A stretch of 64,000 bases of DNA from Lytechinus pictus (lineage: Eukaryota), in contig NC_087258.1 of NCBI RefSeq assembly GCF_037042905.1, forward strand, positions 5,952,001 to 6,016,000, in the 5' to 3' direction. Within the stretch, counting starts at the first letter, position 1, and the number at the start of each line of letters is the position of its first letter. Positions 4,353 through 40,205 of the stretch are shown piece by piece. The notes under the pieces were generated by a model. It was not told the DNA's origin. It was given only the letters and a program-made list of their open reading frames with translations, and did not search any database. The position numbers and the translations under genes were made by a program.

Positions 4353-5582
4353 ATGAATCTCTCATCCCCATCAAGCATCTATGCGGTTATCTTCTACAGC
4401 CTCCAGATCATATTCGGTATTCCCGGCAATGTATTGATCGTACTGGTGTACATACGGAAGAAACGAAAAGTCAGTACGGATATCCTGATCATTGCCCAGG
4501 GCATCATAGACCTCGTGGCATCCCTGCTCGCATCCGTCAACATCCTAAAATCCATCTCCGATCGCTTCACCATCAAAGCCATCTGCCGCATCACTCTCTT
4601 CGGCAACAACTCGCTCGCCTTCTCGTCTTTGTTCCTAACCGCCGCGATTGCGCTTGACCGCTTCTTTTTCGTATGTCGCCCGTATGGAAAGAGAACGTCG
4701 AACAATCGAGCGTTGTGTCTGGCGGTAGCCTGCTGGGTTTTAGGAAGCTCTCTCACCTGTACAAAACTCATCTATGTTGAAGCGGTTCCATCAATCAGTG
4801 GACAAAAGACCTGTCTTGTCATAGATACACTCCAGATCTTTGACAAGCTTGAAGCGTGGTTAAAGACTTCTGGATTCGTACTTGCGTTGGTCGTGAGTAG
4901 CGTTATGTATGGAAAAATATACCATACCATTAGACACCAGGCAAAGATCCATGCTCAGCTGGTAGGAGGTGTATCGAAGAAGGTTACTACGCCCAAAATA
5001 GCTTTCAGAACACAGGAAGAACTGATACAAACAGAGACAGATGCGTGTCATAGCACTCTCGAGCAATCAATGGTAGCATCGGGCGAACCGTCCGATAAGC
5101 AAGAAGCCATTACAATGGAAAGGTGTCCACAGTCCTCAAAGACATCGTTTTTGCAGGTGAATGGAAGAGCTAAAGAACGGGATCCGATGACACCCAATTC
5201 GCTTTCAAGCGCGTTTGACGGTCAAGCTACATCGCAGGTTACCTTCACAAATTCACACTCAAATTCTATTCCCGTCAACTCCCGGCAGAACTCACATCTG
5301 AAGTTGTCTGACCGCGGTGAGAACAGAACGACGAAAATGCTCATGGCGGTAACTGCTATACTTTTGGCATCGTGGCTACCACCGATTGTCTTCTTCCATC
5401 TCAGAGACAGCACACTGGATATCATAGAACGCTCCGTCACTGCTGGAACCCTCGTTTTCATCGGTATGGGACTTCCAGGAATCAATCATATTATCAATTA
5501 TTTTGTTTATACTTTCATGAATAAGCGCTTTCGTGTCGATTGCAAGTGCTTGCTCAAAACAATCACTCATAGGTTCTACTAA
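4353..5582 (+). CDS. Single-exon rhodopsin-class (class A) GPCR, 409 aa, orphan/chemoreceptor-like
   Basis: Seven hydrophobic segments; GN in TM1 (GIPGNVLI), D in TM2, DRF at the end of TM3 (ALDRFFFVCRP), W in TM4, SWLP in TM6, NYFVY (NPxxY variant) in TM7, FR in helix 8. Long S/T-rich ICL3. AATAAA at about 5632. Confidence 0.95.
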   Translation: MNLSSPSSIYAVIFYSLQIIFGIPGNVLIVLVYIRKKRKVSTDILIIAQGIIDLVASLLASVNILKSISDRFTIKAICRITLFGNNSLAFSSLFLTAAIALDRFFFVCRPYGKRTSNNRALCLAVACWVLGSSLTCTKLIYVEAVPSISGQKTCLVIDTLQIFDKLEAWLKTSGFVLALVVSSVMYGKIYHTIRHQAKIHAQLVGGVSKKVTTPKIAFRTQEELIQTETDACHSTLEQSMVASGEPSDKQEAITMERCPQSSKTSFLQVNGRAKERDPMTPNSLSSAFDGQATSQVTFTNSHSNSIPVNSRQNSHLKLSDRGENRTTKMLMAVTAILLASWLPPIVFFHLRDSTLDIIERSVTAGTLVFIGMGLPGINHIINYFVYTFMNKRFRVDCKCLLKTITHRFY

Positions 5583-28383: not shown

Positions 28384-30320
28384 CACATGTATATTTGCGC
28401 TTGTAGCAAGTAAATATCATGGCCTATTGGGTTCGTCGATGCAATTATCGAAATGTGATTTTTGCCAAATTCTGGAAGGTTAACTGAATTGATTATAACA
28501 TAAACTAATTATATTTCATAGAACCTGTTTCCTGAATACTTAACAAAATTGTTTTTCCCTTCCCACTTTGACCATTAACATAAATTGGTCCTGTTCACAT
28601 TGCATTTTTTGTGTGATTTCCTTCTCTCCATTTTTCTTCTACCTTTCTCCTTTTTCTTGGTCATGGAACTCATGAAGTTGCCATTACCCCAGTCCACCCC
28701 TCCTAACCACATCTATAAACCAGCGAGTTGTAGATAATGTAACCGAGATTTCTGCCAAAGTTAATTCTAAGAGAACTCCAAACTTAACTTTAAGTCAAAA
28801 TATCTCACTCAATGCATTAATATCGGCATGGCTCATGAGATTCGCATTTCATGGATGAAACTCGATATACATGGGGGAGAGAGAGAGGTCGGGATTGATT
28901 AAAGTAACTGTCATTTATACCACTTGGGAATAAAGCTAATACATGTATAGATTAATTGAATTTCATATGCCTTGATGATGACTTTCATTTTCGTTCTACC
29001 CGTTTATTCATGTTAATATGTCAATATCGCATCTCCCTCTTCCAGTCATTCAGTCATTGCCATTCAAACATACACCAACACGCCCACCCTCACGTAAGGC
29101 ACGCGCATGCGCATTCTACCAAAAGAAACAGTTTGATTTCTATTCTTGGCACATATTTTATTTATGAAAACAGATACTTGGGTGCTCATTTTATTGGGTC
29201 CTATACAAACTCATTTGAAATCGCTACCATAATTATATAGCATTTATCTTCAAACTATTCATAACTTTTTGGGAATAATATCTAATTAGTTTTCTTCTAT
29301 AGTACAGAGTATACAAAGGAAACATAATCATAACGTATTTTTTTTATTCGGCTTCCCGTTATTTTAGCAGAGAGATTGACTATGGTCCAAGCTAGACTGG
29401 ACGTCAGAATACAGGCCATTTGGTCCACTGTCAACGATGGTCTAATTAACGTTTGGTCTACACTAATACCAACTAAGTTTGATACACATTTAAAATGAAA
29501 TACATCCCACCTCAAGTGTTCTCAAATGGTGTTAGTCGAAGTAAATAATAGACGAAATTGGTTTAGCTTAACTAAAAATTACATAAATTGCAAATGGGCA
29601 ACATGAAAAATTAGACCAAATGTAAATTAGACAAAGGAGATGTAGACCAAGTGGCAATTCAGATGAAATTGTTAGTCAAAGGGGGATATTGTTAGCGACC
29701 TGGTTAGAAGAAGCAAATTACATTATAATTGTTTCCTTTGTTTACTCTGTACTGTTGAAGAAAACTATTTTAGTTATCTTTATAGATGGCAGTATGACAA
29801 TCCATTAGAATTATTTACAATGCCAACTCAATCTCACCTTGGTTTATTTTTTTTTTTCGTCCTTTTCTCTTTTTTAGGGAGGGGGGTCATGCTTTATTGA
29901 ATAAGTCGACTGAAATGAAGTTTGCAGGCACAGACATTTGGTTTTGGTTTAGTGTATAATGCAGAGTCTGAAGAAGTGAGACTAGATTAACTCATAAAAT
30001 GTCGCTGCTGGTTCCATTTGACACACACACACACAGAAAGGGTTAGGGGTCTAGTCTACACGATAGGCATGTTATTTGTGTAAGTGTTAAAATTTCAGTC
30101 TGTGCTTGTAGACTAATTAAACCCCTTCATGAGTTTATTTCATCAAAGGCACCACCCTCTGATCTGATACATCGAAATATCCAAATGTGAAGGAAGCAAA
30201 TGTCTCTATAACGAAGCTACAGTGTGCATTAATCTTTATTATTTACAGCTAAGAAAAAAAAATAGTTTTCGCTTCAAATATAAAATTCTAATTTGTATTC
30301 TTAGTATATTCTTAGACATG

Positions 30321-30449
30321 TGAAGCGAAAGCTCAGTCGGTAGAGGAGGGTTTCGGATTCCAGTGGCCCAGGTTCCATTCCCACTTGGTGCCCTTTGGTA
30401 AGGCATTTGTTCTAATACCAGGTCCCTCGGAGAAGACTTTAAGCCGTCA
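30321..30449 (+). mobile_element. 5' half of a tRNA-derived SINE interrupted by the Transib element
   Basis: A-box agctcagtcggtagag and degenerate B-box ggttccattccc. The body ends gaagactttaagccgtc and continues at 40131. Confidence 0.8.
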
Positions 30450-31562
30450 CACAGTGGGCCAGGAGAGAGCAAAAGTGCGCCAAAACTGGTTTTTGGTCAT
30501 GAAACAAATTTCGTTTTTTTCATGTTCTAAGCAAAGATTGTAGAATGCCTCCATACAATATTTCTCCATTAAATTGATTATTAGTTGCACATTTGTATTC
30601 AATATTACCGGGAAATGACTCTTTACGGCTACCGCATGTGTAAATGACACGTTTTAGATATTTCACTGTTTTAACAAAACGGAATGCTTAATCTATTTCT
30701 TATTCACGGTGCTCTTTGATGAATGATTGTTTTAAGTGATCAAAGATTTTCAAGATAAAATAATAATCCCTTCAGAGGCAATTTTGGACGAAACCATTTG
30801 ACAATGGGGGGTTTTAGCAAAAAAAAAATTCATGAGCATTTCTTTTACAAATTGCTGTCGATTGCTGCGCTGTAAATACCATGACAGTCTTTGTTATAGT
30901 TTATGCTTTACATTGATACCAAATTTAGCTGCATATACGTGCATTTTCTGGAGATATGACCAATTTTCCAGCCACATGTTCGCCGTATTTATCACAAAAA
31001 TCGTTCCAAGTTAGTGTCCCATTATGCGCGTGCCGAACGTTGCGGGTGACATTAAACAAACTCCCCGTCGCGTGCTGGGAGAGAGAGAGGGGGGGGGGAT
31101 GTCTGGCTCAAGTGTCTGGCTCTTGTGACTGGTGTCTGCCTTTAAAATATTTTCGTTAAACATACGTAAAGGCAAGCTTTCATTTCCAATTCCACTAACT
31201 ATATAATAATACATGTAACACAACTTCATTTTGATGCCAAACTGTTCCATCCCGTGTTCCATATCTGATATGCTGTCATCCTGAGAAGATTAATTCTTAA
31301 GGTAAGATTTCCGGGTAAGATTATATATTTGTTTTGTTGTTCATAAACCAAGTAGGGGCTACTGTATATCGCTATACACACATGACTAGGGATGTTTTCT
31401 GACAAAATATGAAAATGTGTATAGGACAGAGATGGGATATACGTGGGCTCTATTACATGTATAAGTTGCGTTATCATTATTGGTATTTATCCCCCCAAAA
31501 AGGGTTTGTAACTTCACATACACGTATGAATTCGTTTATCTCTTGGCTCATTCTAAATTTGC

Positions 31563-34500
31563 TTTTTTTTTTTTTAAAGGATGTTTTATTGTATTCTCTC
31601 AAATCAAAATAAACATTCACATTCCATAAGCAGGTTGTACAAACTATTTGAAACATGATTATAAATTATACAATAAATCCATAACAAATATAATTATACA
31701 AACTATACATCAAACTTCAAAGATACTAGAAATTAATACTAATGCGTTTCAGCAATTACAAAATGAAATATTAACAAGATGTATGAATGATAAGAGAGAA
31801 AAAAAAAGATAAAAAGTGTTGTTCTACCTCCCAACCCCCCCCCCCCCCCCCGTCCCTAGGTTAGGAGCACCCTCCCCTTTTTATGCCTATACTCTACATG
31901 GAAGGGACTACAATTCTCCGTATTTATTTATTTTTGTATTTTTTGTGTGGTTTTGTCTCTCGTTGTATATATACCTTTGCCTCACTCTCTCTATATATTC
32001 TTTTAATTCAGATTTTCCCATTTCCTTAAATGTAGAGACATCTTACCTCTACCTAGCGCCAGCCTTCTTTTTTCTCATTCTTCTTCTTTAAATTTCCTTT
32101 TAATTTCATCCATGGTTATAAGTGCACCCTTTTCCCTCCCTTTGAAAATTAAAAATTTAACAAAGATTAGAAAATGATTGACTAAACGTTCCTTTCCTTC
32201 GTCCTTTAATTCTACACCTACAAGAATTTCCTCCCAGCTTAAATTGCCCGTCGAAATAAAACCAAATATCTTCTTACAATTATCCCAAACCAGACAAGCA
32301 TATTCACATTCCAAAAATAGATGGCGATATGTTTCTTCCTCTTTTTTACAATAACAACAAAGATTATTCTGTGAGATTTTAAAACGGAACAAGTGATGAT
32401 TTGTATAAGCAATGCCGTGTAACATTTTAAACTGAAACTCTCTTAATCTACTGTTCAGAGTACATTGTCTTGGTCTCATAAAAATGTGTTCAATCTTTTC
32501 ATAAGAAAAACTATATTTGTTTTTTAACCTTTCGAAAACATCAGGTATTGTGAAGTTACATTTCATAAAATTTGCATAAACGTTTTTAGATACTAACTCC
32601 TCTATTGACAAAATTCTTTTTCCAGATATAAATGATATTTCTTCCCTAAGAGAAGCCTCTTTGCTATCTATTTTCATATTTCGTTTCCAGCTGACTGGAA
32701 AAGTTTTATAAATTGACTCTATCAAATGAAAATCATTTATGTTTAAACCCTGTCTTTGGAAGTACGAAAATGACCTTAAGTTTTCATCACAATCCATAAT
32801 ATGTTTCAGTCTGTAAATATTTTTTTCATATAATTTTTGGTTAAATATGCATTTCCCTTCAATTCGTACAAATTTATTGTTAAAAAATATCTCATTTCCT
32901 TTATATGTTTCAGATTTTAATCGAAAATCCTTCGTCTCTATCCATACTTCTAGCAAATCTATATAAAATTGCGGCAATACTATCTCCAACACTCCAAGCA
33001 AATAATCGCATGAAAATATAAAATTTCCTCCTAGATGTTTTGTGGCATAATTGAAATATTGTTTCCATTTCATTGCATTATTTTCTTTTAGTCGTTTAAT
33101 CCACATAACTCTCTGTGCCTTTATTAACCATTGAAAATTCATCATTTTCAAGCCGCCTTGATGGTAATCTAAATATATCGTTCTTTTGTTGATCTTATTT
33201 CTGCCAACCCACAAAAAAGTAAAAGCCAACTGATCAAGTTCAACATAAACCCATCCTGGGATTGGTGTGAGAGATGCCACATATATGAATTTTGAAAAGA
33301 TAAATTGCTTTAATAATTGTATTTTGCCCATCAAAGTTAAATCTCTTTGCTTCCACCAGTTTAACAGCTTCTTTATTTTACTTAATATTTCTTTATAATT
33401 CAATCTTTCTTTTACTTCTACATTTAAAGAAAAAAATACACCGAGAATCTTTATAAAATCCACCTTTTGGCCAAAAGATAAATCATATGATTTTCCTTGA
33501 GAGGAACCTAGTAATAAAACCTTCGTCTTATCGCTATTAACTCTAAGTCCTGATACTTTTCTGAATTTTTCTAAAATTTCTATTACTTTTTTGACTGAAT
33601 CTAGATCTCGGACAAAAATAGACATATCATCTGCATACAAAATCTGTTTTACTTCTTCCTTTCCAAAGGAAATTCCTTTAACATCATTATTATATCTTAT
33701 ATTATGCGCTAATACTTCTATGCATAAAATGAAAAGATATGGTGAAAGCGGATCTCCCTGCCTTACCCCTCTTTCCACATGAAAATAGCTTGTAGAATCT
33801 CCTCCATTAAAAATACAACTTTGGCTATTTGTATACAATACTTTGACCCATTTGCGAAATTGCTGGCCAAAACCGAATGAACCTAATGTGTGATGTAAAC
33901 ATTTGTGGGATATCGAATCAAAGGCTTTTTCTAATTCAATTGCTATCATATACCCAGGGATATTATTATATAACGTATGAAAAAGCATATCATCAATTAA
34001 TCTGATAGCTTCTCCTATATTCCTGTTTTTAATAAATCCTATTTGATCTGCTAATACAACGCTTTGCAAAACCTCTTTAATTCGTTTTGCTAAAACTTTG
34101 GATATGATCTTATAATCTGTATTCAATAACGAAATGGGTCTATAATTCTTTACGTAATGTGGGTCTTTCCCTTCTTTAGCTAATAAAATAATAATTGCTT
34201 GTTTTTGTGATGCAGAAAGTTCTCCAAGAGCAAAAGCTTCATTGAATGCCCCAATCAATACATCCTTTATTTCAGCCCAAAATGTACAATAAAATTCAAC
34301 TGTTAACCCATCGTTTCCAGGGGATTTATTTTGCTTCATTTCTTTCAGTACCGAAATACACTCCTCTTCTAATATATCCCCTTCACAGCTTTCGGAATCT
34401 TCAGATGTTAACGTTGGTACATTTTTAAAGAAATCCCTAAAATCTTCCGTGTATTCCCTAGCATAAAGATGGGTATAAAATGATTTAATTTCATTTAAAA

Positions 34501-36550
34501 CTTCTTTCTCGTTTTCAGTAATTTCTTCGTTAACCTTAACTAATTTTGTAATAATACTTTTCTTCTTGTTAGATTGTAATAGTTGACTAAAGTACCTTGT
34601 ATCCCTTTCTCCACTTTCGTACCATGTTTCACGAGACCGAATTTTAATACCTTCATTAATATACTCGTAACTGTCTGCAAGTTCTTTCCTTTTCTTTTCT
34701 ATCTTTTTAATCAATTCTGCATCTACTGAATTTACGCAACTACCTTCTAAACATTCCAATTCCTTTTCGAGAGATTCTTTTTTATTTTTTTTTCCTTAGC
34801 CAGTTTTTTCGAAAAAGTTATTGTGAAAGACATTATTTTCATTTTCAAATAATCCCATACAACTCTTCTATCTTTAACTTCTGTCTTTATTTTCTCCTTC
34901 AATGTAAGTATTTCTATTTTCATCTTTTTCACATATTCTACATTACCACAAAGGCTATTATTAAATTTCCAATAAGAACCATTCTTTTTACGCATTTCCT
35001 TATCAGTTTTATCATACAAGAACAAAAATATAGCTGAATGGTCAGGAGCTATAGATGGTAAAATTTTGCACCTAATAACAACATTTACCAATTCATCTGA
35101 TATTAGCCAATGATCTAATCTGCTTTGCATAAACGGATTATTTTTAGTGAAGGTAAATTGTCTTTTCAATGGATTTCTCTCCCTCCATATGTCTATCAAT
35201 TGTAGTTCCTCCATAAAATTTTCTATTTCTTTACTAACCTTGTCATGTAATTTTTGTTTCACTGTTCCATTATAATCTAATTCAGAATTCATAATAATAT
35301 TAAAATCTCCTCCCATTAAAACAGGTTTGTTACAACTATTTATTTTGTTTAATTTTATAAGCATATCCTTTAAAAATTTTATTTGATGATTTTCTTTATC
35401 CCTCGTAGGTAAGTATACATTACAAAGGACCATTCTATGTCCTTGGATTTCATAATCAATGAGTATTTATCGCCCTTCGTTATCGTGTTTTATATTTATA
35501 AGTTTAAAGTCTAGCGAGGTTTTGATAAGAATGAGTACTCCTCTGCTGTGATTTGATCCATGACTATAGTAACATGACCCATGCCACCCAGAACTCCATC
35601 TATCCTCTACATCTTTTGTACTATACGTCTCCTGTAAAACAATTACATCCCCTTTTTCTTTGCACCATGAAAATATTCGTCCCCTTTTCGCGCATTCTCT
35701 TATTCCTCTAACATTTAAGGAAACAAAATTTAAACATCTATTCATAAAGAAAATCTAAAAAGATCATTCCAACATTTTTTTTGTATAAAAACTTTAAGAT
35801 TTTCACTACGTTATTTATAGGGAGAGTGAGGATTAGACATACCAACATATTTCCTAGTGTAACTGCAGTACATAATCCAATGATAAACTCTAATTTATTG
35901 CGCCATTGTTCAAAACCAAAATGAATGTCGATCAATTCAAATATTGCTATCCCTTCCATGTAGAACATTATCTCTAAGAATCCTGAATAAGGTGCTCGTA
36001 AATCCTGCAGGTAAAAAAAGAAGGGAAAGAATCCCATCTATACGACCCTCTCCAAAGCAGCACTCCCTCACAGCTCACCCTTCTTTACAGGTTGCTGTAG
36101 TATTTCCAATAATAATAATCTACCCCTAATTCTTGTCTTTTTTCTTTGTTTGAACCTTATTGAATTTAAACGAAATAGCTGTAAATAAAATTAATAATGA
36201 AAAAAGAAGAAGAAAAGCTGACATTCAATTAGCATATTCCGCATTAATAAGTTAAATTTTAAACTTACACATATTAAGCAAGTATATATGTTTTTCTGTT
36301 AATAAGAACCTATCCCCAACAAAACAATACAAGTAAAATAATGGTACATGTTTGAAACACAGCCAATCAAAGTCCCAAAGCATTCCTAATCCCCTTGTTT
36401 CTATAATTAAAAAAAAAAAAAAACTTTCAAACAGTCCTGAGATTCACCTTTTGGTAACAAAACACCTAATCCCTATATAACAATATACCAAAGTCATGAT
36501 ATTGGATTCCATATAAGCATATTAAAGGTGCTACACTTTAAAGAAAAAAA
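31563..36550 (-). mobile_element. L1/Tx1-clade LINE (ORF2, 3'UTR, poly(A)) inserted in the Transib element; 5' boundary uncertain
   Basis: Poly(T) at about 31563-31575 preceded on the minus strand by AATAAA. ORF2 below. A U-rich (sense) region lies upstream of ORF2. No ORF1 and no TSD found. Confidence 0.85.
32004..35745 (-). pseudogene. LINE ORF2 (APE endonuclease, reverse transcriptase, zf-RVT), disrupted
   Basis: EN motifs SLNVRG, LQET, GGDFN, SRLD, PDH. RT motifs KSPGNDG, YRPISLLN, EKAFD, RQGDPLSP, YADD. C-terminal CCYC...HLFLEC. In-frame TAA at 35467-35469, a frameshift in an A-run near 34780, another near 32075, and E in place of the first catalytic D (AIELEKAFD). Confidence 0.95.
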
Positions 36551-36574
36551 AAATCACACTATTTCCATCATTAA

Positions 36575-37157
36575 AGGAGAATGAAACTCTTGGAGCAAGT
36601 TAGCTTTTGTGAAAGCAGAAAAATCTAAGAATAAGATCAACAAAACTTTGAGTAAAATAGGACTAGCAATAAAAGAGTTATGAGCATTTGAATGTCGAGA
36701 TCACTAATGCTATGGAGATCCTCCCATTGACAATGCGACCAAGATCTGTGATGTCACACACGTACAACTCTCCCATTTGGACACTGAAAATATACCCCAA
36801 AACATCTCTTTTTGCTCATTCTAATCATATGACAAACGATTCATCAATGATATAATGTTGTGAAACCTCTGTACTTGTCATCTCATAAAGAGAACACCTC
36901 ACCTTGTGATAGACTCTATAAAAGTGAGAATATAAGTGAAATAAGTACTAAAGTAATGAGGGAGTTGTACGTGTGTGATATCACAGATCTTGGTCGCATT
37001 GCCGTTGGGAGGATCTACATGGCACTAGTGATCTCAATATTCGAATGCTCATAACTTTCTTATTATTCATTCAATCTTCCTCAAACTTTCAACAATATGT
37101 TTCTTTGATTTTTCTCTTTGATATGGATTCAGCTGGTTTCAAGGGTTTCATTCTCCT
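36575..37157. mobile_element. Kolobok-like non-autonomous element
   Basis: TTAA|aggagaatgaaac ... gtttcattctcct|TTAA. Long internal inverted segments (caatgcgaccaagatctgtgat / atcacagatcttggtcgcattg). Confidence 0.85.
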
Positions 37158-37444
37158 TTAATGCCAGGAATACAGAACGAAATACTTATGTGACAATAAA
37201 TTCCACTGCAGGTAATGCATACCTAATCATTGGTTCAAAACAACAAAACTTGCATTTTTGGGACATTGTATTGAGGATAACTTCCTTTTGAATATTTAGT
37301 TCTATCTTGCACAAAAGGAACACCTGGAATTCTTTTTTTTTCTTAAAATCTAAGCAAACAAACACTTGGAGCATACATGCGCCAAAAAATATATAAAAAA
37401 AGCCAAAGTGTGACTTGTTTGTTTGAATTCACATTGGTTTCCCC

Positions 37445-39250
37445 AATCAATGCAAGAATGAACAAGAGATGCGATCATGCGCAACTCACTAACGCAAGTC
37501 ACCATATACCCCAATCGATGCCTCATGTTCCAAAATAATAATAAACAAAAAACTTCATCGTGTCTCTCCTTTGGTATTTGTGCAACATTCCTCAAGCCTG
37601 TGGGCATACTGATGGTCTTGTTCTTTTCTCTAATTCTATAGGCCTAATTTGCGTAATGAATAAAGAAAAAAAAAAAAAATAAAATAAAATGCTTGCATAG
37701 CAAGCAGTGCAATACTTTGTGTTCCTAATCAATGCTTCAAGACAATAAACTTGTATTTCTTAATACATTTCAGGCTACCCTTTTATTTCAAATTCATCCT
37801 TGCATTAATTGGGAAAGAAGAAAAGGAAACACTTTGTTATTTCTTTTTTATATCCAAACAAATAGACACTTAAGCATACGCACTTCTGCTATTCAAGTAT
37901 CTAACACATTACAACAGGAAAGTTTCCCATCTTAAGGATTTGCACTCCTTTTCAAAATTATCCCTTTTTTTAATTCCACTGTACCATAGTACAAGAATGA
38001 CCAGATTGCATTATTCTGGCTTTGTGTTCCTAATCAATGCTTCAAGACAATAAACTTGCATTTCTTAATACATTTCAGGCTACCCTTTTATTTCAAATTC
38101 ATCCTTGCATTAATTGGGAAAGAAGAAAAGGAAACACTTTGTTATTTCTTTTTGATATCCAAACAAATAGACACTTAAGCATACATACTCCTGCTATTCA
38201 AGTATCTAACACATTACAACAGGAAAGTTTCCCATCTTAAGGATTTGCACTCCTTTTCAAAATTATCCCCTTTTTTTAATTCCACTGTACCATAGTACAA
38301 GAATGACCAGATTGCATTATTCTGGCTTTGCTTCTTTTTTGTAAGATACTCTCAAGAGTTATTTCTTTTCATCTACTGAATGTAATAAAGCAGTGAAAAT
38401 TCAAGGTGTTATTTGTTTATATAGATTCACTTTAGTTAACTTAATTCATAGAGGATGAAAACGAGAAGCGATCATGCGCAACTCACCATAACGTTAATGC
38501 TACGTTTTGTACACCAATCAATGCCTCGAACACTCCGAATTCCATCTTATGATTCTAATTATAAACAAAAACTTCATATTATCCCTCCTTGAATATGAGC
38601 CACATTCCCCGAGCCGAGCAAGCAATATTAATAATGTTGCACCTGTATAAATAGGCACTCCAATTCTATAGGCCTTAATTAAGTAATGTATGAAGAAAGA
38701 AATGCTTGTCTAACATTAAATACTTGTAACAATCAATACGATGTTTTACGTTCCTAATAATCAGTTCTTTAAACAATAAACTTTGCACTTCTTGGGTAAG
38801 ATATTTCGGGGTGTCCCCCATTCAAATGTTCCAGATTCATCCTTGCATTGATTGGGGAAAAAAGAAAAGGATACACTTGTTATTCCTTTTGATTTTGTAA
38901 TCTAACCAAATAGGCACTTGCAACTATTTTAACAAACATAATAGGTTTACATTTACAACAAGGAAATTTGCCCTTCTTAAGGATTAGCAACATTTTTCAA
39001 ACTTCTCTCTCCTCTCTCTTATTTTCACTACCACTGTATGCCTGATACAAAATGGCCGAATTGTGTAATTTCTATTTACCAATACTCTCAAGAAATATGT
39101 CCTTCTATTCTACTGGCTTTGAAAATAAGCATAAAAAAGTCAAAAGAGTTGCTCATTTGTATAAATTTACTATACTCTACTCAATCAATGCAAGGATGAA
39201 AAAGATGTGCAATCATGAGCCACTCCCCTTCGCAAGTCACTCTAATGCAT
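37445..39250. repeat. Diverged tandem repeat (unit about 700-740 bp, about 2 full copies plus the start of a third) containing a young 305-bp tandem duplication
   Basis: Anchor atcatgcgcaactcac/atcatgagccactc at about 37474, 38471 and 39212. Near-identical duplicated blocks at 37716-38020 and 38021-38330. Confidence 0.85.
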
Positions 39251-39354
39251 GCGATGTTTAATCAATACCTATAATTGTTAGTATCGATCAAGAAGGAAGT
39301 GTATTATTATCATTTCAAGGATTGTTTGGTTTATGACTCTCATTGACTTTATAT

Positions 39355-39522
39355 GTATTCCACAGACTAATGGTAACAGGTGACATTGTGATTAGTAGTA
39401 AGTTTTTAAGAGTACAACAATCACAGCCTCTTCCCCCTGATGTTCAAAGTATGCTAACAGATCCTCTCACCAAAGACATAATAGTTGGTGAGATAGTAGA
39501 GAGAGACTCTGATTCGGAATAA
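39355..39522 (+). pseudogene. C-terminal remnant (possible last exon) of a Transib transposase
   Basis: Translates VFHRLMVTGDIVISSKFLRVQQSQPLPPDVQSMLTDPLTKDIIVGEIVERDSDSE*. This fits the Transib C-terminal pattern as recalled (DV-x-x-RLL-x-x-SDP-x-ISS...PLP-x-E-V-x-x-LL plus an acidic tail). Possible splice acceptor ttccacag at 39365; AATAAA at 39708; about 600 bp from the right TIR. Confidence 0.72.
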
Positions 39523-40130
39523 CTTTGTATACGCCGTTCTTGGTGAAATAGGTATATAGGCCTTGTAGGACCTTGTACTGATTAACCTGCAGAGGACCCG
39601 GCCTCTATTATTTATCACTGGAATCATTATTTTAAAGATTTCACTGTCCACTTCTGGTATCAATCCATTTTAATTCATGTAGGTTTGGTTAATCATTGTA
39701 CCCAGGGAATAAAAATACTCCTTTTCATTTTTTTTTTTACAATTTCACTTTGAATTTTACAATTCCAGATTCATGGTAGGGCGCCCTCTTTAAGCGATAC
39801 TCAAGTCACCAATTGAATTATTTGTACCCCGAGCACAGACTTTTTTTGTTTGTTTGTGTGTTTGCTGTTTGCTAATATGCTTAATTATTGCTGAAATTTC
39901 TCTAAAAGTAGTTTCTGAAAATTTGAAACTTATTGTAGAATTAGGAACATGTAATTTCTTCTCAAATGTTAACAGCCAATCAGAAAACAGTATTTTAACG
40001 ACGTCATCAATATTTGAAAATACTTTTATTGAATTCTACGGGTGAAATTACCCCTATCTCCCAAATTTAATCGTACAAATGTGTGAATAATGGGTTTTGG
40101 CGCACTTTGGGTTCATTCTGGCCCACTGTG

Positions 40131-40205
40131 CGTCGGTCCTCGGGTTGCTTGCTTGCGAGCATTCATGCTTTCTTAGCAATCAGGTAAAAAAAATCACCAC
40201 CATAA
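40131..40205 (+). mobile_element. 3' half of the SINE interrupted by Transib
   Basis: cgtcggtcctcgggttgcttgc...agcaatcaggtaaaaaaaa continues ...ttaagccgtc from 30449. Confidence 0.75.

What the first reader, a model, noticed from the sequence alone, without database searches (positions are those of the whole stretch)
30450..40130. 9.7-kb Transib/RAG-family transposon whose ends resemble V(D)J recombination signals
Seen: both ends begin with the exact RSS heptamer CACAGTG. The element is flanked by a 5-bp GC-rich TSD (CGTCA/CGTCG; the one difference fits CpG decay). Removing it restores a contiguous SINE (ttaagccgtc|ggtcctcggg), which supports a true insertion. Established: CAC...GTG ends with a 5-bp TSD define Transib and RAG-like transposons, the ancestors of RAG1 and the RSS. 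Inference: this is an internally deleted member of a possibly undescribed echinoderm Transib family. It is invisible in the ORF track because a LINE and other repeats fill its interior.
Basis: partly seen in the sequence, partly recalled or inferred. Interest (0 to 1): 0.9.

Follow-up and report, generated by a model that had tools for sequence, protein, structure and literature searches.

The report
Sea-urchin Transib mini-transposon carrying a LINE
This is a real cut-and-paste transposon of the Transib (RAG1-related) kind, but its native form is a 2-kb non-coding element present about 135 times in this sea urchin genome; this copy is 9.7 kb only because a LINE retrotransposon landed inside it, and Transib elements have been known in sea urchins since 2005.

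Summary
Window 30450-40130 is bounded by 37-bp terminal inverted repeats that start with CACAGTG. It is flanked by CGTCA/CGTCG, and it interrupts a SINE whose uninterrupted form, with a single CGTCG, occurs 1,222 times in the genome (control 0).

It belongs to a young family. The left end has 135 matches. Sixty-nine left/right end pairs were found, with a median length of 2,015 bp. Ten of 11 fetched copies have perfect 5-bp duplications, and 26 of 33 insertions lie in CGNCG. All DNA-level hallmarks of the Transib superfamily are met. The A-rich TR2 block of RAG-like (RAGL) transposon ends is absent.

The 9.7-kb size is secondary: a 2-kb non-coding element (30450-31563 plus 39269-40130) carries one 7.7-kb nested block that begins with the poly(A) end of a degenerate L1-like LINE.

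No transposase source was found. All RAG1-like hits in the genome are ProtoRAG-type and lack this family's ends in the flanks I hold. I had no canonical Transib transposase to use as a query.

Both ends have the same 22-bp spacing, so there is no 12/23 asymmetry.

Sea-urchin Transibs, including non-autonomous ones, were described in 2005, and this scan has already noted Transib-type elements elsewhere in this genome. Verdict: a new member of a known kind, of modest interest. Side observations: the same LINE family sits at the same nucleotide in three copies, and four heptamer-to-heptamer end junctions lie on one chromosome.

The parts
30318..30444 (+). 5' part of the interrupted SINE (host of the insertion), with A/B-box-like motifs
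   Evidence: Over 1,900 first-look candidates at about 84% identity. The junction 28-mer is contiguous in 1,222 copies. No tRNA call from Rfam or ARAGORN.
30445..30449 (.). Left target-site duplication CGTCA (CGTCG with a CpG-type G>A change)
   Evidence: The SINE consensus has CGTCG here.
30450..30486 (+). Left 37-bp TIR: heptamer CACAGTG, a conserved block to position 13, a variable stretch, then a conserved block ending in CCAAAAC
   Evidence: There are 89 exact copies and 135 at <=3 mismatches in the genome, against 0 for the control.
30450..31563 (+). Left arm of the canonical 2-kb non-autonomous element
   Evidence: Collinear at 91-96% identity with positions 1 to about 1135 of canonical copies.
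31564..39268 (-). Nested 7.7-kb block. It is an L1-like LINE on the minus strand: poly(A) tail at 31564-31575, a broken ORF2 at 32075-35745, a 5' region without ORFs, and secondary repeats. It is bounded by a 2-bp CT duplication.
   Evidence: The break in collinearity falls at one point. Other LINE copies start matching at the poly-T.
32075..34759 (-). LINE ORF2 fragment: reverse transcriptase (RVT_1) plus zf-RVT, 894 aa
   Evidence: RVT_1 E=2.7e-37, zf-RVT E=2e-8.
34747..35745 (-). LINE apurinic-type endonuclease region, split into two ORFs (34747-35433 and 35467-35745)
   Evidence: Exo_endo_phos / Exo_endo_phos_2, E about 1e-6 to 1e-7.
36560..37172 (.). Palindromic MITE-like repeat nested in the LINE 5' region
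   Evidence: inverted repeats I1 (161-nt arms, 80% complementary) and I3.
37715..38330 (.). 305-bp tandem duplication (2 copies, 98% identical) in the LINE 5' region
39269..40130 (+). Right arm of the canonical element
   Evidence: Collinear at 93-97% identity with positions from about 1135 to the end of canonical copies.
40094..40130 (-). Right 37-bp TIR (reverse complement begins CACAGTGGGCCAG and ends CAAAGTGCGCCAAAAC)
   Evidence: There are 94 exact copies in the genome, against 0 for the control.
40131..40135 (.). Right target-site duplication CGTCG
40136..40196 (+). 3' part of the interrupted SINE, ending in an A-run

Best explanation
Window 30450-40130 is one copy of a young, non-autonomous (non-coding) DNA transposon family of the Transib superfamily, canonical length about 2.0 kb, about 135 copies. 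It inserted into a CGTCG site inside a SINE and was later split by a nested L1-like LINE, which makes it 9.7 kb.

Inferred mechanism: a Transib-type DDE transposase supplied in trans binds the two 37-bp ends, contacting the heptamer-proximal block and the A-rich distal block. It nicks at the CAC border and releases the element by the nick-hairpin route described for the Helicoverpa zea Transib transposase (HzTransib) and for RAG. It then integrates with a 5-bp stagger into CGNCG, which gives the 5-bp duplication.

Shown here: the ends, the TSDs, the target motif, the copy number, the pairing of ends, the filled versus empty site, and the nested LINE. Inferred: the identity of the transposase and the chemistry.
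For: The 37-bp TIR starts with CACAGTG. Ten of 11 fetched full copies have perfect 5-bp TSDs. Twenty-six of 33 insertion sites are CGNCG, against a background of about 0.09% per site in the flanks, and most exceptions are CpG-decay variants. The left TIR has 135 matches and the right TIR 94 exact matches, with controls at 0. Sixty-nine end pairs have a median length of 2,015 bp, and 50 of them are 1.94-2.3 kb. The empty site is contiguous in 1,222 SINE copies. The window copy is collinear with canonical copies except for one block at 31564-39268. The two arms agree in a 13-bp heptamer-proximal block and a 15-bp distal block and differ only between them, the bipartite layout published for Transib TIRs. 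Published parallels (PMC1131882): Transib1_SP of the purple sea urchin has a CGGCG TSD, Transib TIRs are about 38 bp (heptamer, variable spacer of about 23 bp, A-rich nonamer), and targets are GC-rich. The nick-hairpin mechanism and 5-bp TSDs of HzTransib are described in PMC4840297. Transibs with symmetric 20-22-bp spacers exist (PMC8355894).
Against: No Transib transposase gene was identified in this genome, so no autonomous partner is shown. All 22 hits to the Pfam RAG1 model PF12940 are weak or ProtoRAG-like. I had no canonical Transib transposase to use as a query. The match to a nonamer is only moderate (6/9 and 7/9 against ACAAAAACC). Comparison with Repbase/Dfam consensus sequences was not possible.
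Confidence: 0.87

Rival explanations
1. The family is a non-autonomous RAG-like (RAGL, ProtoRAG-type) element, mobilised now or in the recent past by the sea urchin's own RAG1L/RAG2L proteins and not by a canonical Transib transposase.
For: RAGL transposons also make 5-bp TSDs and start with CAC (PMC7204232). The genome encodes open RAG1L frames of 612 and 624 aa that are very close to amphioxus BbRAG1L (E=4e-147). No canonical Transib transposase was found here. Purple sea urchin RAG1L can cleave at RSS heptamers when given mouse RAG2 (PMC4840297).
Against: Published RAGL TIRs carry an A-rich TR2 block right after the heptamer (CACTWMCAAAC..., PMC7204232). This TIR has GGCCAG there. No family TIR, at <=9 mismatches, lies in the flanks held around any RAG1-like hit (coverage is partial, mostly on the low-coordinate side of each hit, up to about 10 kb there and about 1.5 kb on the other side). 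Sea-urchin RAGL loci are reported to lack TIRs and to be immobile (PMC9885083, PMC10462144). SpRAG1L with SpRAG2L gave no recombination (PMC4840297).
Confidence: 0.07
2. It belongs to another cut-and-paste superfamily with CAC... ends (CACTA/EnSpm, Chapaev, or an undescribed group), and the Transib likeness is superficial.
For: The transposase is unknown. CAC termini are not unique to Transib.
Against: The TSD is 5 bp in every checked copy, not the 2-4 bp of CACTA/Chapaev (from general knowledge). The CGNCG target equals the CGGCG of Transib1_SP (PMC1131882). The TIR length and bipartite layout match the published Transib consensus.
Confidence: 0.03
3. The composite 9.7-kb unit (element plus LINE) is itself the mobile unit, or the ancestral form from which the 2-kb copies derive by deletion.
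For: Two other copies carry the same LINE family at the same nucleotide (C13:~17.58 Mb and C14:3.07 Mb), at different insertion sites with different flanks.
Against: The window copy and the C14:3.07 Mb copy belong to different subfamilies separated by about 20 diagnostic sites. Their LINE parts are 98.3% identical, significantly closer than their transposon arms at 95.8% (p=0.003). The right LINE junction of the window is unique among scored hits. More than 360 other LINE copies start exactly at the poly(A) boundary, so the LINE is the inserted piece.
Confidence: 0.03

Closest known systems
Transib1_SP / TransibN1_SP of the purple sea urchin (Kapitonov & Jurka 2005, PMC1131882)
   Same: Echinoid host. 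5-bp TSD of the CGNCG type (Transib1_SP: CGGCG). CAC...GTG termini. TIR of about 38 bp with a heptamer, a variable spacer and an A-rich distal block. Non-autonomous derivatives are present in many copies.
   Different: Sequence relatedness could not be tested because Repbase is not available and the paper's supplement is not held. Transib1_SP is a 4.1-kb autonomous element with a 676-aa transposase. This family is 2.0 kb with no coding remnant, and no autonomous partner was found.
HzTransib of Helicoverpa zea (the active Transib; structures 6pqn and related entries)
   Same: Expected mechanism: nick-hairpin excision at the heptamer border and 5-bp TSDs with a GC bias (PMC4840297).
   Different: Insect host. 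HzTransib encodes its own transposase, and its GC preference is described as slight, whereas here the target is a sharp CGNCG motif (26/33).
ProtoRAG / RAGL-B transposons (amphioxus, molluscs, hemichordates)
   Same: 5-bp TSD and a CAC-initiated heptamer. RAG1L-B-type genes are present in this genome.
   Different: RAGL TIRs have an A-rich TR2 block next to the heptamer and carry convergent RAG1L-RAG2L genes. Here TR2 is absent, no genes lie between the ends, and no intact RAGL transposon is known in echinoderms (PMC10462144).
Vertebrate V(D)J recombination signal sequences
   Same: Exact consensus heptamer CACAGTG. An A-rich block GCCAAAAC(T/C) lies 22 bp away and matches ACAAAAACC at 6/9 (left) and 7/9 (right), including nonamer positions 5-6. 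Heptamer and nonamer regions are conserved and the spacer is variable.
   Different: Both ends have the same 22-bp spacing (23/23-like), so there is no 12/23 asymmetry. The ends flank a mobile element with TSDs, not gene segments.
L1-superfamily LINEs (the nested element)
   Same: APE endonuclease, RT and zf-RVT domains, a poly(A) tail and a very short (2-bp) target duplication.
   Different: ORF2 is broken into at least three pieces, and no ORF1 was recognised in the 3.2-kb 5' region.

Membership tests
Transib superfamily (DNA-level definition) | 5-bp target-site duplication | tested here: met
   Ten of 11 fetched full copies are perfect. The eleventh and the window copy each differ by one CpG-type change.
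Transib superfamily (DNA-level definition) | Termini 5'-CAC...GTG-3' with an RSS-like heptamer (consensus CACAATG) | tested here: met
   CACAGTG at both ends. It is conserved in 89 + 94 exact TIR copies.
Transib superfamily (DNA-level definition) | TIR of about 38 bp: heptamer, variable spacer of about 23 bp, A-rich nonamer-like block | tested here: met
   37-bp TIR. The arms are identical at positions 1-13 and 23-37 and differ between those blocks. An AAAA core lies at positions 33-36. The nonamer match itself is only moderate (6-7 of 9).
Transib superfamily (DNA-level definition) | GC-rich target preference in an AT-rich genome | tested here: met
   CGNCG in 26/33 insertions. Flank GC is 36% and the CGNCG background is about 0.09% per site.
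Transib superfamily (protein-level definition) | Encodes, or is mobilised by, a Transib (RAG1-core-like DDE) transposase | tested here: inconclusive
   No coding remnant in canonical copies. All PF12940 hits in the genome are RAGL-type. No Transib profile or query sequence was available (PF26100 is not in the library).
RAGL / ProtoRAG transposons | A-rich TR2 block immediately after the heptamer | tested here: not met
   Positions 8-13 are GGCCAG at both ends. The published consensus is CACTWMCAAAC (PMC7204232).
RAGL / ProtoRAG transposons | Convergent RAG1L-RAG2L genes between the TIRs, or the same TIRs flanking such a pair elsewhere | tested here: not met
   No such genes lie in the element. 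No family TIR, at <=9 mismatches, lies in the held flanks of any RAG1-like locus (flank coverage is incomplete).
V(D)J RSS pair (resemblance only) | 12/23 spacer asymmetry between the two ends | tested here: not met
   Both ends carry the distal block at the same distance (22-bp spacer).
CACTA/EnSpm and Chapaev | 2-4-bp TSD and CACTA-type termini | tested here: not met
   The TSD is 5 bp throughout and the termini are CACAGTG.
L1-like LINE (nested block) | APE endonuclease + reverse transcriptase + 3' poly(A) | tested here: met
   for the domains. Poly-T on the + strand at 31564-31575, and other family copies begin to match there.

The most novel reading that the evidence does not exclude
No canonical Transib transposase could be shown in this genome, but open ProtoRAG-type RAG1L frames exist. 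The most novel reading not excluded is therefore that this young, about 135-copy family, with perfect RSS heptamers and 23-RSS-like ends, is a natural genomic substrate of the sea urchin's 'domesticated' RAG1L/RAG2L. That would be the long-sought target of echinoderm RAG-like proteins. The four heptamer-to-heptamer end junctions on chromosome C13 would then be germline 'signal joints'.
Probability: 0.05. Interest if true: 0.85.

Novelty: new member of a known kind. Interest (0 to 1): 0.3.

Why it matters
Transib elements are the transposon relatives of RAG1 and of the V(D)J recombination signals. A young, abundant family with intact ends in a sea urchin is therefore useful material. It offers a sharply defined CGNCG target, a symmetric 23/23-like end design, and many near-identical copies for testing which transposase (Transib or the host's RAG1L/RAG2L) recognises RSS-like ends in an echinoderm. 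It does not open a new category: sea-urchin Transibs and their RSS-like ends have been in the literature since 2005, and other windows of this scan show Transib-type elements in this genome, one of them probably this same family. For annotation, the practical lesson is that the 9.7-kb 'element' should be recorded as a 2-kb non-autonomous Transib with a nested LINE.

Tried and rejected
1. Autonomous partner. A PF12940 (RAG1) scan of the genome at E<=10 gave 22 hits. The four hits tested against solved structures are closest to amphioxus BbRAG1L, not to HzTransib. None has the family TIR in the flanks I hold.

2. The longer copies that I hold are not autonomous. The 4.2-kb copy L036 has only a weak GIY-YIG match (E=1.7e-4, below the Pfam cutoff), possibly a Penelope-like insert. 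L038 and L041 have no long ORFs.

3. Ways of obtaining a Transib transposase query failed. PF26100 is not in the library. The ESM Atlas listed probable Transib clusters but gave no usable ids. The supplement of the 2005 paper is not held.

I could therefore not read the three 6.1-6.2-kb copies, the other 8-9-kb copies or the C13 junction cluster. I did not try to read them by other means.

5. Empty-allele test.

6. A PF03089 (RAG2) scan found nothing. This is uninformative, because the control genomes gave nothing either.

7. The idea that one LINE insertion was followed by transposition of the composite was rejected on subfamily markers and the divergence contrast.

8. A strictly site-specific LINE was rejected, because other copies have diverse flanks.

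9. A tRNA origin of the SINE was not confirmed.

10. No subterminal repeat arrays were found in a canonical copy.
Full report
**Observation**

CACAGTG starts the element at 30450, and its reverse complement CACTGTG ends it at 40130.

- The inverted repeat is 37 bp long. The two arms are identical at positions 1-13 (CACAGTGGGCCAG) and 23-37 (AAAGTGCGCCAAAAC). Only 6 positions within 14-22 differ.
- The flanks are CGTCA on the left and CGTCG on the right.
- In the whole 64-kb window, 59 x 45 candidate heptamer pairs were tested, and this is the only pair that passes a combined filter: 5-bp flank identity with at most 1 mismatch, plus at least 24 of 40 TIR identity.

**A true insertion**

I rebuilt the empty site as a 28-mer: the left SINE flank, one CGTCG, and the right SINE flank.

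- It occurs 1,222 times in the genome at <=3 mismatches. The reversed control occurs 0 times.
- The commonest form, GACCTTAAGCCGTCGGTCCTCTGGTTGC, is an uninterrupted SINE with a single CGTCG.
- The element therefore entered a CGTCG inside a SINE and duplicated it. The left copy later changed to CGTCA, a CpG-type transition.
- The SINE family is large, with over 1,900 first-look candidates. Rfam and ARAGORN do not call a tRNA in it, although A/B-box-like motifs are visible in the sequence.

**A family, not a one-off**

- The first and last 300 bp each hit about 150 places at 94-98% identity.
- The left 37-mer has 135 matches at <=3 mismatches, 89 of them exact. The right 37-mer has 94 exact matches. 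Controls are 0.
- Pairing the listed ends by contig, orientation and distance gives 69 elements with a median length of 2,015 bp. Fifty are 1.94-2.3 kb, nine are 2.3-5 kb and ten are longer.
- I fetched eleven full copies. Ten have perfect 5-bp duplications, and one has a single CpG-type mismatch.
- Across 33 independent insertions the pentamer is CGNCG in 26. Most exceptions are one transition away from it. A weaker R-C preference lies just outside the pentamer. Flank GC is 36% and the CGNCG background is about 0.09% per site.

**Anatomy of this copy**

- Canonical copies align to 30450-31563 and 39269-40130 and to nothing in between. The window copy is the ordinary 2-kb element with one 7,705-bp block inserted at a single point, bounded by a 2-bp CT duplication.
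- The block begins with a poly-T run on the + strand, which is a poly(A) tail on the minus strand.
- More than 360 other genomic copies of the same repeat start matching exactly at that poly-T. That is the signature of a LINE 3' end.
- On the minus strand lie a reverse transcriptase with zf-RVT (32075-34759) and an apurinic-type endonuclease in two pieces (34747-35745). This is an L1-like LINE with a broken ORF2.
- The remaining 3.2 kb has no ORFs of note. It contains a palindromic MITE-like repeat (36560-37172) and a 305-bp tandem duplication (37715-38330).
- The last 120 bp of the block did not appear in any other top-scoring hit, so this part of the block appears to be low-copy.
- Canonical copies contain no long conserved ORF. 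Their two longest ORFs match nothing in the PDB, including the Helicoverpa zea Transib transposase, HzTransib. The family is non-autonomous. 'Internally deleted' remains an assumption.

**What it is**

Four DNA-level features match the published definition of the Transib superfamily: the 5-bp duplication, the CAC...GTG termini, a 37/38-bp TIR with a conserved heptamer region, a variable middle and a conserved A-rich distal block, and a GC-rich target. Kapitonov and Jurka (PMC1131882) describe:

- a 38-bp consensus TIR made of CACAATG, a 23-bp variable spacer and AAAAAAATC;
- a preference for GC-rich targets;
- in the purple sea urchin, the autonomous Transib1_SP, flanked by CGGCG, which is the same CGNCG motif seen here;
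- the non-autonomous TransibN1_SP.

RAG-like (RAGL) transposons share the 5-bp duplication and the CAC start. However, their TIRs carry an A-rich TR2 block straight after the heptamer (PMC7204232, PMC10462144), and here that position reads GGCCAG. The 5-bp duplication excludes CACTA-type and Chapaev elements.

**Likeness to recombination signals**

- The heptamer is the exact RSS consensus.
- After a 22-bp spacer, the distal block reads GCCAAAACT on the left and GCCAAAACC on the right. These match ACAAAAACC at 6/9 and 7/9 positions, including the critical nonamer positions 5-6.
- Both ends have the same spacing, so the pair is 23/23-like and not 12/23.
- Symmetric Transibs with 20-22-bp spacers are already known (PMC8355894).

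**How it most likely works**

The mechanism is inferred from the family's published properties (PMC4840297, citing Hencken et al. 2012).

1. A transposase supplied in trans binds both ends.
2. It nicks at the heptamer border.
3. It forms hairpins on the flanking DNA and releases a blunt-ended element.
4. It inserts the element with a 5-bp stagger.

That the two arms agree only in two blocks, and that these blocks are identical in most copies, suggests bipartite recognition. This is an inference.

**The missing transposase**

- A genome-wide scan with the Pfam RAG1 model gave 22 hits.
- The best are open frames of 612 and 624 aa (C182/C233 and C4). They match amphioxus BbRAG1L at E=4e-147 and HzTransib only at E=3.7e-5.
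- The fragments I tested are also ProtoRAG-like.
- None of these loci has the family's TIR in the flanks I hold.
- Pfam has no Transib model in this library, and I could not obtain a Transib transposase sequence inside the session.
- The autonomous partner is therefore unknown. Three copies of 6,133, 6,135 and 6,201 bp, and several of 8.5-9.3 kb, are the places to look.
- The literature states that Transibs with intact TIRs occur in many echinoderms, while no intact RAGL transposon has been found there (PMC10462144). It also states that sea-urchin RAGL loci lack TIRs and are immobile (PMC9885083). This favours a Transib transposase.

**Age and structure of the family**

- Thirty left arms fall into at least four subfamilies with clear diagnostic sites.
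- Copies without secondary insertions in the aligned stretch differ from the consensus by about 1.4-4%.
- The window copy belongs to a small subfamily with L005 and L019 and has 2.3% derived substitutions.
- Its TIRs are still identical to the family's commonest forms.

**Side observations**

1. The same LINE family sits at the same nucleotide in two other copies (C13:~17.58 Mb and C14:3.07 Mb).
   - The flanks and TSD of the C14 copy, the one whose flanks I hold, differ from the window's.
   - The C14 copy is from another subfamily.
   - Its LINE part is 98.3% identical to the window's, while the transposon arms are 95.8% identical (p=0.003).
   - The LINE therefore arrived after the host copies diverged. 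That means either recurrent insertion at a hot spot or conversion between copies.
   - The LINE is not generally site-specific.
2. A perfect heptamer-to-heptamer junction of a right and a left end, with no base between them, occurs four times, all within C13:13.886-14.024 Mb. The control is 0. I could not read the region.
3. One copy (L033) has a second family end only 8 bp beyond its own end, inside a (CCG)n-like target.

**Earlier notes of this scan**

Earlier notes report several Transib-type non-autonomous elements elsewhere in this genome, including a 2-kb one that is probably this family (s1-322091). One follow-up names the species as Lytechinus pictus (s1-294478). I did not verify the species. 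Those notes reached the same verdict: real, but a known kind.

**Verdict**

It is a new member of the Transib superfamily in a sea urchin: a 2-kb non-coding element made 9.7 kb by a nested LINE. Its transposase source is unidentified.

Noticed in passing
window 31562-31575; also G000 C14:3070502-3078673 (L027) and C13:~17571711-17580070: The same young L1-like LINE family is inserted at the identical nucleotide (…AAATTTGCT^ATAATTG…) in 3 of about 135 copies of the transposon family. The copies come from different subfamilies. The LINE parts are more alike (98.3%) than the host arms (95.8%, p=0.003). This points to a hot spot or to conversion between copies, not to one inherited insertion.
   Followed up: partly
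G000 C13:13885878, 13889114, 13956303, 14023749: A perfect heptamer-to-heptamer junction of a right and a left TIR (CTGGCCCACTGTG|CACAGTGGGCCAG, no spacer, no TSD) occurs four times, all within 140 kb of one chromosome; the control is 0. It looks like a signal joint or circle junction, or a head-to-tail dimer, amplified locally. The region also holds an unusual cluster of family ends.
   Followed up: partly
G000 C8:28732660-28738794, C8:38026588-38032720, C19:12618723-12624923: Three copies with exact TIRs have nearly the same length, 6,133-6,201 bp. They are untested candidates for a longer, possibly autonomous, form of the family. Their sequence could not be fetched.
   Followed up: no
L042 1501-3159 (G000 C182:16498-18156; twin on C233); L044 (C4:15674907-15676589): Open RAG1-like frames of 612 and 624 aa. 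The C182 frame is very close to the amphioxus ProtoRAG RAG1L (PDB 6b40, E=4e-147); the C4 frame was scored only against Pfam RAG1 (E=4e-65). The two loci share almost no DNA similarity with each other. Further RAG1L fragments lie on C2, C5, C9, C10 and C13, including a tandem series of weak hits at C9:18.15-18.17 Mb.
   Followed up: partly
L033 2196-2220 (G000 C2:29474456-29474500): A second TIR of the same family faces the end of a complete copy only 8 bp away, inside CGCCGCCG. This is consistent with two insertions into overlapping CGNCG motifs of a CCG repeat.
   Followed up: no
L036 1651-2415: The 4.2-kb copy of the family on C2:43.15 Mb carries a 2.2-kb insert with a 255-aa ORF that has a weak GIY-YIG match (E=1.7e-4, below the Pfam cutoff), possibly a Penelope-like element.
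   Followed up: no
window 36560-37172 and 37715-38330: A 613-bp palindromic MITE-like repeat (161-nt arms, 80% complementary) and a 305-bp tandem duplication (98% identical) lie in the 5' part of the nested LINE block.
   Followed up: no
window 30318-30449 + 40136-40196: The interrupted SINE belongs to a family of well over 1,000 copies. It has A/B-box-like motifs but gets no tRNA call from Rfam or ARAGORN.
   Followed up: partly
window 4353-5582 (+): An intronless 409-aa ORF with a rhodopsin-family 7TM receptor domain (E=5.7e-26). It is probably a GPCR gene about 25 kb upstream of the element.
   Followed up: no
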